A stretch of 63,592 bases of DNA, taken from positions 63,178,001-63,241,592 of the forward strand of contig NC_135761.1 in the NCBI RefSeq assembly GCF_052425735.1, given 5' to 3'. Positions 7,698-43,278 of this stretch are shown piece after piece; position 1 is the stretch's first letter, and each line of letters opens with the position of its first letter. A model generated the notes under the pieces. The model worked only from the letters and a program-made list of their open reading frames with translations, did not search any database and was not told the DNA's origin. This DNA is from Oculina patagonica (Eukaryota). Position numbers and translations under genes: made by a program.

Positions 7698-7858
7698 ATG
7701 CGGTACTTTGTGTTAGCTTCCCTGTTTGCCGTTATATGCGGGACAGCCGCTCAAACTCCAGCAAACTGCGAATATCATTCGGATGGCAAGAAACTGGTTT
7801 GTGAAGACATCATCGGCCCGTCCTTCGTCCAGGGTATTGCAGAATCTACCGAGCTTAT
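7698..7858 (+). CDS. Receptor exon 1: signal peptide plus LRRNT-like cap
   Basis: [18 protein letters not shown]|[35 protein letters not shown]; hydrophobic leader; donor gtaagt at 7859 (phase 2). Confidence 0.75.

Positions 7859-43278: not shown

What the first reader, a model, noticed from the sequence alone, without database searches (positions are those of the whole stretch)
7698..43278. Scavenger-type surface receptor fused to a cytoplasmic U-box ubiquitin ligase
Seen: 41 phase-consistent exons link a signal peptide, 3 MAM, 4 SRCR, 2 LDLa, WSC, 2 CUB and a mucin stalk through one TM helix to a C-terminal U-box. Established: familiar animal U-box proteins (CHIP/STUB1, UBE4A/B, PRPF19, PPIL2, UBOX5, WDSUB1) are soluble, and receptor-like single-pass E3s such as RNF43/ZNRF3 use RING domains. 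MEGF8 and attractin recruit a separate ligase (MGRN1). I know of no characterised MAM/SRCR/CUB receptor with its own U-box. Inference: a self-contained 'receptor-ligase' that binds an extracellular ligand, microbe or neighbouring membrane protein and ubiquitinates targets inside the cell.
Basis: partly seen in the sequence, partly recalled or inferred. Interest (0 to 1): 0.93.

Follow-up and report, generated by a model that had tools for sequence, protein, structure and literature searches.

The report
Coral scavenger-type receptor ending in U-box
A coral gene encodes a large surface receptor whose intracellular tail ends in its own ubiquitin-ligase (U-box) domain; it is real and expressed, but the same domain layout was already listed for Acropora in 2016 and its function has never been tested.

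Summary
Pfam scans of single exons confirm 3 MAM, 4 SRCR, 2 LDLa, 1 WSC, 2 CUB and a complete U-box (E 5.5e-23). The U-box model has pLDDT 93 and lies 0.8 Å from a rice U-box solved with its E2.

It gives one 2045-aa ORF: signal peptide, ectodomain, Ser/Thr/Pro stalk, one TM helix, a 299-aa tail and a C-terminal U-box.

Assembled RNA contigs from four runs of four studies join the TM exon to the U-box exon through canonical introns. One contig carries the whole chain.

The ectodomain-to-TM junctions were not seen directly. They rest on four things:
- a reading frame still open at the 5' end of the RNA contigs, with no ATG before the TM;
- exon-by-exon collinearity in another coral and in Nematostella;
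- the CUB2 exon being present in the same RNA runs;
- a published 1948-aa Acropora millepora transcript.

That transcript is in a supplementary table of Neubauer et al. [quoted passage not shown] The architecture is therefore already catalogued, but nobody has discussed or tested it.

The receptor-ligase reading is plausible and unproven. Interest is moderate, not 0.93.

The parts
7698..7858 (+). Exon 1: ATG, signal peptide [19 protein letters not shown], Cys-containing N-terminal cap
   Evidence: An in-frame stop lies just upstream of 7674. Chain model. No Pfam hit.
11039..11208 (+). Exon 2: Cys-rich cap, LRRCT-like by eye only
   Evidence: Chain model. No Pfam hit.
11675..11821 (+). Exon 3: least certain exon of the model
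   Evidence: Weak acceptor (0.6), no homology, no Pfam hit.
11893..11931 (+). Exon 4: 39 nt, encodes [12 protein letters not shown] with a furin-like RKRR
   Evidence: Strong donor (7.2).
12836..14649 (+). MAM1 in four exons: 12836-12979, 13319-13428, 13621-13782, 14562-14649
   Evidence: Pfam MAM on three of the pieces. Splice sites.
14752..15283 (+). SRCR1 in two exons: 14752-14916, 15140-15283
   Evidence: Pfam SRCR profile positions 1-45 and 45-100.
15632..20653 (+). LDLa1 plus MAM2 in four exons: 15632-15883, 18859-18930, 19742-19926, 20557-20653
   Evidence: Pfam Ldl_recept_a and MAM. Chain model.
20750..20866 (+). LDLa2 exon
   Evidence: Pfam Ldl_recept_a, E 8e-12.
21455..24658 (+). MAM3 in four exons: 21455-21610, 22035-22135, 24257-24439, 24568-24658
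   Evidence: Pfam MAM on all four pieces.
25106..25441 (+). SRCR2, single exon
   Evidence: Pfam SRCR, E 2.9e-32.
26602..26916 (+). SRCR3, single exon
   Evidence: Pfam SRCR, E 2.8e-22.
27481..27801 (+). SRCR4, single exon
   Evidence: Pfam SRCR, E 2.5e-31.
28024..29072 (+). WSC in three exons: 28024-28092, 28462-28556, 28973-29072
   Evidence: Pfam WSC, E 3.1e-10 and 0.0039, on two of the exons.
30043..31142 (+). CUB1 in two exons: 30043-30240, 30951-31142
   Evidence: Pfam CUB. The end of the second exon is 82% identical in coral scaffold L002.
32040..32129 (+). Pro/Thr-rich linker exon
   Evidence: 74% aa identity in L002.
32925..33287 (+). CUB2, single exon
   Evidence: Pfam CUB, E 8.3e-15. 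60% identity in L002 and 37% in Nematostella L001. Held by the same RNA runs as the U-box exon.
34604..34753 (+). Stalk (mucin-like) exon 1, phase 1-1
   Evidence: Splice candidates. Weak collinear match in L002. Junctions not seen in RNA.
35562..35639 (+). Stalk exon 2, phase 1-1
   Evidence: Conserved at DNA level in L002 (71%). Junctions not seen in RNA.
36793..36987 (+). Stalk exon 3, phase 1-1
   Evidence: IHQTD.TMTT is conserved in L002. Junctions not seen in RNA.
38646..38672 (+). Mini-exon (STEGTPTP)
   Evidence: The donor joint to 38800 is seen in 4 RNA runs. The acceptor is inferred.
38800..38829 (+). Mini-exon ([10 protein letters not shown])
   Evidence: Both joints are seen in 4 RNA runs.
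39324..39449 (+). TM exon: [23 protein letters not shown] followed by KNKKKR
   Evidence: The upstream joint is seen in 4 runs and the downstream joint in 3. Hydropathy. 50% identity in L002.
40155..40298 (+). Juxtamembrane exon ([11 protein letters not shown], an FxNxxY motif)
   Evidence: Joints. Conserved in L002 and Nematostella.
41134..41362 (+). Tail exon with PPPY, NPGY/YAQL and PPAY
   Evidence: Joints in 4 runs. 76% identity in L002. Both PPxY motifs are kept in Nematostella.
42052..42083 (+). 32-nt mini-exon
   Evidence: Both joints in 4 runs.
42595..42699 (+). Pre-U-box exon (VLPPIRG ... QGDEA)
   Evidence: Joints in 4 runs. The same exon join is present in the Nematostella protein P0007.
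42920..43278 (+). Last coding exon: Pro-rich linker, U-box (model residues about 1972-2044), stop at 43276-43278
   Evidence: Pfam U-box, E 5.5e-23. PDB sequence hits. AlphaFold2 pLDDT 93. Foldseek TM 0.86 and rmsd 0.8 Å to 7xed.
43279..45150 (+). 3' UTR; the end is approximate
   Evidence: RNA contig X3 record 7 (2909 nt) reaches record position 1210 at 43450 and runs on for about 1.7 kb. The end point is inferred, not read.

Best explanation
What it is. One gene of about 35.6 kb and about 40 exons encodes a type I surface glycoprotein of roughly 2000 aa in a coral. It appears to be the counterpart of the Acropora 'SRCR+CUB' proteins with MAM, WSC and UBOX that Neubauer et al. listed in 2016.

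Ectodomain. It reads: signal peptide, Cys-rich cap, MAM, SRCR, LDLa, MAM, LDLa, MAM, SRCR x3, WSC, CUB x2, then a 160-aa Ser/Thr/Pro stalk. This is a scavenger or pattern-recognition type binding array.

Tail. After one TM helix comes a 299-aa, mostly low-complexity tail. It carries conserved sorting and adaptor motifs (FVNEAY, PPPY, NPGY/YAQL, PPAY) and ends in a canonical zinc-free U-box that keeps the Ile, Trp and Pro of the E2-binding face.

Most likely mechanism (inferred, not shown):
- A multivalent ligand (microbe, symbiont surface or modified self) clusters the receptor.
- Clustering brings the U-boxes together, and they recruit a UBE2D-type E2 (or UBE2N/UEV).
- The juxtamembrane and tail lysines of the receptor, or of proteins bound to it, are ubiquitinated.
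- This drives endocytosis and lysosomal or phagosomal sorting of receptor plus cargo. The PPxY motifs give a second input from NEDD4-type ligases.

In effect it would be a one-chain version of the plant immune receptor plus PUB-type U-box ligase pair.
For: Shown:
- Domains by Pfam.
- A single 2045-aa ORF over 40 GT-AG exons.
- One TM helix with a positive-inside flank and the tail motifs.
- RNA contigs from 4 runs of 4 studies with GT..AG joints linking 38672|38800, 38829|39324, 39449|40155, 40298|41134, 41362|42052, 42083|42595 and 42699|42920. One 2909-nt contig carries all of them, and most intron bins show little or no depth, the exceptions being interspersed repeats.
- The spliced frame is open from 38646 to the stop, with no ATG before the TM, so coding must continue upstream.
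- The U-box is full length. It has only one Cys and one His, so it is not a RING.
- Ile of CPI, Trp of RRWF and Pro of SSP align with the same residues of the plant PUB-type U-boxes (GmPUB13 7c96, OsCIE1 7xed), which are known ligases; the Legionella LubX U-box 1 row also keeps all three. Trp and Pro are invariant, and the Cys-Pro of CPI nearly so, among 30 relatives.
- The U-box model has pLDDT 93 and its best fold matches are U-boxes solved with their E2.
- Conservation: all exons from CUB1b to the U-box are collinear in a Tara Pacific coral scaffold, and DNA similarity there is confined to exons. In Nematostella, CUB2, the juxtamembrane exon, the PPxY exon and the U-box keep the same order.
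- The CUB2 exon is held by the same RNA runs as the U-box exon.
- Literature: an A. millepora transcriptome contig of 1948 aa with the same domain string ending in UBOX, and an A. digitifera model written '...CUB-TM-UBOX'.
Against: - No read or contig was seen across the junctions 33287|34604, 34753|35562, 35639|36793 and 36987|38646. All four RNA contigs break at 38644.
- No full-length relative with a U-box was found in the protein libraries.
- The old Nematostella annotation splits the locus into two genes, although it does so at a 1.9-kb assembly gap.
- All ectodomain exons are phase 1-1, so phase consistency is easy to meet by chance.
- There is no biochemical evidence for ligase activity, ligand, substrate or topology.
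- The mechanism (clustering, autoubiquitination, endocytosis) is inference from known U-box and receptor biology.
Confidence: 0.6

Rival explanations
1. There are two products. The ectodomain exons give a secreted or separately anchored scavenger protein. A shorter transcript from an internal promoter downstream of CUB2 gives a small stalk-TM-U-box protein, or a soluble U-box protein starting at the Met after the TM.
For: - The RNA contigs of all four runs begin at 38644 and none was seen to reach the stalk or CUB2 exons.
- Unspliced contigs covering 38237-38672 exist.
- The old Nematostella annotation has two genes.
- No long U-box relative was found in the protein libraries.
Against: - The spliced frame is open, without ATG or signal peptide, through two mini-exons before the TM.
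- The contig break two bases before the exon start is what a de Bruijn graph gives when spliced and unspliced forms both end in AG.
- The stalk exons are conserved and collinear in another coral.
- An A. millepora transcript of 1948 aa carries signal peptide through UBOX.
- The Nematostella split coincides with an N gap.
Confidence: 0.12
2. It is a cis-acting surface regulator like RNF43/ZNRF3. The ectodomain docks a neighbouring membrane protein or a secreted modulator, and the U-box ubiquitinates that neighbour to set its surface level. It would not be a cargo-uptake receptor.
For: - The layout matches: ectodomain, one TM, an E2-recruiting domain at the end of a long disordered tail.
- MAM and CUB domains are known mediators of protein-protein contacts at membranes (established knowledge).
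Against: - SRCR x4, WSC and a mucin-like stalk fit broad ligand or glycan binding better.
- The conserved FxNxxY, NPxY and PPxY motifs point to trafficking of the receptor itself.
- Nothing here discriminates firmly between the two readings.
Confidence: 0.18
3. The U-box is a signalling scaffold. It would build K63 chains with UBE2N/UEV, as TRAF6 or Act1 do, and start an NF-kB or MAPK type immune response rather than sorting the receptor.
For: - Among the fold matches are CHIP-UBC13-UEV1a and TRAF6-Ubc13 complexes.
- SRCR, MAM and CUB proteins are treated as candidate pattern-recognition receptors in cnidarians (PMC5119243).
Against: - E2 preference cannot be read from the sequence.
- The best matches are UBE2D-type complexes (7xed, 3l1z, 4wz3).
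- The tail carries endocytic motifs rather than known signalling motifs.
Confidence: 0.1

Closest known systems
Acropora millepora 'CUB1' (transcriptome contig c000424, 1948 aa) and A. digitifera 'CUB2' (aug_v2a.03894.t2, 1126 aa), in the supplement of Neubauer et al. 2016, PeerJ 4:e2692 (PMC5119243)
   Same: [quoted passage not shown] The A. digitifera model is written ...CUB-TM-UBOX.
   Different: Only a table entry and a cartoon exist. No sequence was available to me for alignment, so orthology or identity is inferred from architecture and length (1948 vs my 2045 aa). The paper does not comment on the U-box or on a ligase function.
RNF43/ZNRF3 and the PA-TM-RING family (RNF13, RNF128/GRAIL, RNF130, RNF167)
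   Same: Single-pass type I membrane proteins with a ligand or partner-binding ectodomain and a cytosolic E2-recruiting domain. They control surface receptors by ubiquitination.
   Different: They use a zinc RING and a single PA ectodomain. Here the domain is a zinc-free U-box (one Cys, one His) and the ectodomain is a roughly 1700-aa MAM/SRCR/LDLa/WSC/CUB array. It is not a member of that family.
Plant immune receptor kinases with PUB-type U-box ligases (FLS2-PUB12/13; OsCERK1-OsCIE1)
   Same: The closest solved U-boxes by fold and among the closest by sequence are plant PUB-type (7xed OsCIE1, 7c96 GmPUB13, 1t1h AtPUB14). Functionally this is a surface pattern receptor coupled to a U-box ligase that ubiquitinates the receptor.
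   Different: In plants the receptor and the ligase are separate proteins, the ligase is recruited by phosphorylation, and the PUBs carry ARM repeats. Here both parts are on one chain, with no kinase and no ARM repeats.
DMBT1, MALRD1 and other SRCR/CUB/MAM/LDLa surface or secreted proteins
   Same: The same extracellular module set, and presumed broad ligand or microbe binding.
   Different: They have no cytosolic ligase. DMBT1 ends in a ZP domain, which was not found here.
MEGF8-MGRN1 and Attractin-MGRN1; Act1 (TRAF3IP2) at the IL-17 receptor
   Same: A receptor-proximal E3 acting on membrane proteins or adaptors.
   Different: In those systems the ligase is a separate soluble protein recruited to the receptor tail.
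Soluble animal U-box proteins (CHIP/STUB1, UBE4A/B, PRPF19)
   Same: The same fold and E2-binding face.
   Different: They are weaker sequence matches than the PUB and LubX types (E 1e-4 to 1e-7 against 1e-10 to 1e-15). They are soluble and have different partner domains.

Membership tests
U-box E3 ligase domain (Pfam PF04564) | Full-length match to the family profile above the curated cut-off | tested here: met
   81.4 bits against a cut-off of 21.4; profile positions 1-73 of 73; E 5.5e-23.
U-box E3 ligase domain (Pfam PF04564) | RING-like cross-brace fold without zinc ligands | tested here: met
   AlphaFold2 pLDDT 93.3. Foldseek TM 0.86 and rmsd 0.8 Å to the OsCIE1 U-box in 7xed. The 78-aa domain holds one Cys and one His only.
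U-box E3 ligase domain (Pfam PF04564) | Conserved E2-contact residues: Ile in loop 1, Trp in the central helix, Pro in loop 2 | tested here: met
   CPI, RRWF and SSP align with the corresponding residues of the plant PUB U-boxes and of LubX U-box 1. W39 and P47 are invariant, and C12/P13 nearly invariant, in 30 relatives. The Ile itself is invariant among the seven cnidarian relatives.
U-box E3 ligase domain (Pfam PF04564) | E2-dependent ubiquitin transfer | not testable with these tools
   Needs an in vitro assay.
Type I single-pass membrane receptor | N-terminal signal peptide, one TM helix, positive-inside flank | tested here: met
   [19 protein letters not shown] at the start. A single hydropathy peak at residues 1724-1746, followed by KNKKKR. 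No dedicated predictor was available.
Type I single-pass membrane receptor | Ectodomain, TM and tail on one mRNA | tested here: inconclusive
   TM to U-box is shown by RNA contigs. Ectodomain to TM rests on an open frame, collinearity, co-presence in RNA runs and a published transcript. The junctions themselves were not seen.
Cnidarian 'SRCR+CUB (DMBT-like)' group of Neubauer et al. 2016 | SRCR and CUB domains combined with MAM, LDLa, WSC and UBOX | tested here: met
   Pfam on exons compared with the table entry.
Transmembrane RING ligases (RNF43/ZNRF3, PA-TM-RING) | C3H2C3/C3HC4 zinc RING and a PA ectodomain | tested here: not met
   There are no zinc ligands in the ligase domain. No PA or RING Pfam hit reached its cut-off on any exon.
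DMBT1-type SRCR proteins | C-terminal zona pellucida domain | tested here: not met
   No ZP hit in any scanned exon. After CUB2 the chain goes on to stalk, TM and U-box.

The most novel reading that the evidence does not exclude
This is a natural ligand-gated receptor-ligase, conserved in Hexacorallia since the coral/sea-anemone split. A pattern-recognition ectodomain would be directly coupled to its own U-box, so that binding of microbes or symbionts triggers self- or neighbour-ubiquitination and decides uptake, sorting or tolerance. It would be a one-chain animal counterpart of the plant PRR-PUB module, and the first cell-surface receptor shown to carry an intrinsic U-box.
Probability: 0.4. 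Interest if true: 0.75.

Novelty: already known. Interest (0 to 1): 0.45.

Why it matters
All characterised receptor-like E3 ligases of animals use RING domains, and all familiar animal U-box ligases are soluble. A surface receptor with a built-in U-box would show a second, independent way of wiring extracellular recognition to ubiquitination.

Corals make the question biologically relevant. There, the decision to take up, keep or destroy microbes and algal symbionts is central, and SRCR, CUB and MAM proteins are prime candidate receptors.

The protein has sat unremarked in a supplementary table since 2016. This work adds several things:
- a curated exon model;
- direct transcript evidence for the TM to U-box link;
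- the conserved tail motifs;
- evidence of conservation in another coral and in Nematostella.

Together these make the hypothesis testable with ordinary biochemistry and with Nematostella or Aiptasia genetics.

Tried and rejected
1. Automatic exon chain. I wrote a codon-usage plus splice-score chain finder and calibrated it on the RNA-proven tail, where a penalty of 7 recovers exactly the seven exons in the test span. Run alone on the rest, it put false exons into poly-Pro low-complexity DNA (14179-14255, 17205-17294) and read the stalk in wrong frames. I replaced those by hand, using Pfam-supported pieces and conservation.

2. Search of 1.84 billion representative proteins with the U-box exon. 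The closest hits are short fragments, 74-49% identical. Those whose source I looked up come from coral-reef metagenome scaffolds and from Nematostella. Some are ORF calls that read into the intron. No long MAM/SRCR plus U-box protein appeared in the best 150.

3. Three attempts to get round the length window of the search for homologous proteins:
- The U-box region of the 1192-aa P0097 gave 14 candidates and nothing useful.
- An alignment headed by P0097 was swamped by ankyrin proteins.
- An alignment headed by the 1278-aa P0141 gave 14 hits, none cnidarian.
A blank here does not show absence.

4. Other long proteins with U-boxes have unrelated architectures (kinase/ankyrin, multi-U-box). P0037 (cadherin-like, TM, two U-boxes) sits on a compact intronless metagenome contig and looks bacterial.

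5. An exact search for the 38672|38800 exon junction in JGI metagenome contigs, aimed at fetching a spliced transcript, gave no hit.

6. Loci for P0003 and P0012 carried no DNA.

7. The Nematostella locus is riddled with N gaps, one where the TM exon should be.

Full report
**What is in the sequence.** The window is AT-rich animal DNA (about 39% G+C) with one N run at 61827-61970.

- MAM pieces at 12.8-14.6 kb.
- SRCR in two halves at 14.7-15.3 kb.
- LDLa plus the start of a second MAM at 15.6-15.9 kb, and the rest of that MAM at 18.9-20.6 kb.
- LDLa at 20.75 kb (E 8e-12).
- A third MAM at 21.4-24.7 kb.
- Three single-exon SRCR domains at 25.1, 26.6 and 27.5 kb (E 3e-32, 3e-22, 3e-31).
- WSC split over three exons (E 3e-10 on the middle one).
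- CUB in two exons at 30.0-31.1 kb, and a single-exon CUB at 32.9-33.3 kb (E 8e-15).
- A complete U-box at 42922-43275 (81 bits, profile positions 1-73 of 73, E 5.5e-23).
The U-box exon starts after a good acceptor at 42918-42919 and ends at a TGA at 43276-43278.

**Gene model.** I trained a codon log-odds table on the Pfam-supported pieces and combined it with generic splice scores in a phase-aware dynamic programme. On the tail, where RNA gives the truth, a penalty of 7 returns exactly the true exons.

Over 7698-38672 the programme found most domain exons, but it also made errors in low-complexity DNA. I corrected these by hand.

The result is 40 exons, all AG...GT, giving 6138 nt and one ORF of 2045 aa without a stop. 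Almost all ectodomain exons are phase 1-1, which is typical of shuffled extracellular modules. Phase consistency alone is therefore weak evidence.

The protein has the following features:
- The signal-peptide-like start [19 protein letters not shown].
- 25 N-glycosylation sequons and 67 Cys in the ectodomain.
- A 160-aa stalk that is 51% Ser, Thr and Pro.
- One strong hydrophobic segment (residues 1724-1746) followed by KNKKKR.
- A 299-aa tail containing FVNEAY, PPPY, NPGY/YAQL and PPAY.
- The U-box at the very C-terminus.

**Transcript evidence.** Public RNA runs hold the U-box exon. I laid Logan contigs of four runs from four studies on 37460-43450.

GT..AG joints appeared at 38672|38800, 38829|39324, 40298|41134, 41362|42052 and 42083|42595 in all four runs. 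The joint 39449|40155 appeared in three. The joint 42699|42920 appeared in all four; in two runs it is shown shifted by 3 nt, which a synonymous C>T difference at 42921 explains.

One contig (X3 record 7, 2909 nt, depth 392) carries the TM exon, all intermediate exons, the U-box exon and about 1.9 kb of 3' UTR. Most intron bins have little or no depth, apart from interspersed repeats.

Translating the spliced form gives one frame open from 38646 to the stop. It has a stop just upstream in the intron and no ATG before the TM helix. The coding region must therefore continue into upstream exons.

All four contigs start at 38644, two bases before the inferred acceptor. Every candidate upstream exon, and the intron itself, ends in AG. 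That is what a k-mer graph produces where alternative predecessors meet. It means the upstream junctions were not observed.

**Conservation.** The best library hits to the U-box exon are short fragments. One of them, P0007 (223 aa), is a Nematostella vectensis gene model that already joins the PPxY exon, the pre-U-box exon and the U-box exon.

At its locus (L001), CUB2, the juxtamembrane exon ([10 protein letters not shown]), the PPxY exon and the U-box lie in the same order and orientation within 7.8 kb. The old annotation splits them into a 1309-aa upstream gene and the 223-aa U-box gene. The split falls at a 1.9-kb N gap, where the TM exon should be.

P0001 comes from Tara Pacific coral-reef metagenome scaffolds, presumably coral DNA. 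On scaffold L002 every exon from the end of CUB1 to the U-box is found in order:
- the linker, at 74% aa identity;
- CUB2, at 60%;
- the three stalk exons, with weak matches;
- the TM exon, at 50%;
- the juxtamembrane exon, at 52%;
- the PPxY exon, at 76%;
- the pre-U-box exon, at 53%;
- the U-box exon, at 72%.
The three mini-exons are too short for this search to pick up.

DNA similarity between the two corals is confined to exons, and a fatty-acid desaturase gene follows on the minus strand in both. The CUB2 exon is held by eight of the fourteen RNA runs that hold the U-box exon, with a share of 0.97 in run X8.

**The U-box.**
- Zinc ligands: it has one Cys and one His, so it cannot be a zinc RING.
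- Sequence: it aligns end to end with Legionella LubX U-box 1, plant PUB U-boxes, UBE4A/B, Ufd2 and CHIP. The Ile of CPI, the Trp of RRWF and the Pro of SSP fall on the known E2-contact positions.
- Conservation: Trp and Pro are invariant, and the Cys-Pro of CPI nearly so, in an alignment of 30 relatives.
- Fold: AlphaFold2 gives pLDDT 93.3. The top Foldseek matches are U-boxes solved with their E2, namely OsCIE1-OsUBC8 at TM 0.86 and rmsd 0.8 Å, then E4B-UbcH5c, CHIP-UbcH5/Ubc13 and LubX-UBE2D2.
Nothing in the sequence suggests a dead domain. Activity itself is untested.

**What is already known.** A full-text search for U-box, SRCR, MAM and CUB together finds two papers. The second uses 'U-box' for a THAP zinc-finger, which leaves one relevant paper: Neubauer et al. 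2016 on cnidarian scavenger receptors (PMC5119243).

[quoted passage not shown] Its supplementary table lists two entries:
[quoted passage not shown] The first is a transcriptome contig. It is independent evidence that signal peptide, ectodomain and U-box sit on one mRNA in a coral, and it matches the window's domain order almost item for item. The paper draws no functional conclusion from the U-box. I found no paper on a natural transmembrane U-box receptor.

**Interpretation.** The gene and its architecture are real, expressed, and conserved in stony corals and a sea anemone. The most economical reading is a type I scavenger or pattern-recognition type receptor whose own U-box ubiquitinates the receptor tail or bound partners after ligand-induced clustering.

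The conserved FxNxxY, NPxY and PPxY motifs point to endocytic sorting and to cross-talk with NEDD4-type ligases. This mirrors, on one chain, the plant pairing of immune receptors with PUB-type U-box ligases, which are also the closest solved relatives of this U-box.

Three other readings remain open: a cis-regulator of a neighbouring receptor (as with RNF43/ZNRF3), a K63 signalling scaffold, and a split into two products. The split reading is the least likely, given the open frame, the conservation and the Acropora transcript.

**Verdict.** The novelty claim is overtaken by a 2016 catalogue entry. The remaining value is as a well-documented, testable candidate for the first receptor with an intrinsic U-box ligase.

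Noticed in passing
window 46854-48026 (- strand): A single-exon fatty-acid desaturase gene, 84% aa identical to the one downstream of the U-box gene on Tara Pacific coral scaffold L002. Local gene order is therefore conserved between the two corals.
   Followed up: partly
window 38060-38260, 40260-40660, 41460-41860, 42060-42660: Intron stretches with very high summed contig depth in all four RNA runs, many partial or loose-ended contigs and odd non-GT/AG joints. They look like interspersed repeats transcribed elsewhere in the genome.
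   Followed up: no
window 14179-14255 and 16825-17085: Two intronic stretches encode almost the same Gly-run/Pro-run peptide (GGGGG...[10 protein letters not shown]). They are probably copies of one repeat family, and they fooled my exon finder.
   Followed up: no
window 11893-11931: A 39-nt phase 1-1 exon encodes [12 protein letters not shown], with a furin-type RKRR, between the N-terminal Cys-rich cap and MAM1. It has a strong donor (7.2). No RNA or homology check was made.
   Followed up: partly
window 7698-7858 and 11039-11208: The N-terminal Cys-containing exons give no Pfam hit even at E 5, so the 'LRR cap' reading of another first-stage note is not supported by profile search.
   Followed up: partly
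window 39640-39760: A (GT)n-like microsatellite in the intron after the TM exon. Contigs are cut there (repeats skipped at 39638-39742).
   Followed up: no
L001 5322-7226 (Nematostella DS469565.1): A 1.9-kb N gap lies where the TM exon should be. It probably caused the old annotation to split the orthologue into a 1309-aa gene and a 223-aa U-box gene.
   Followed up: partly
L007 1728-4679 (JGI metagenome 3300022690): P0037 is a 983-aa intronless ORF with repeated GGFVVVW units, a Cadherin_3 domain, one TM helix and two C-terminal U-boxes, on a compact contig. It is probably a bacterial protein reminiscent of the double U-box of Legionella LubX.
   Followed up: partly
window 42921: Runs X1 and X3 (organism A) seem to read T instead of C here (GGC to GGT, synonymous). 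This shifts the displayed joint to 42701|42922.
   Followed up: partly
window 61827-61970: A run of 144 N. I left it as it is.
   Followed up: no
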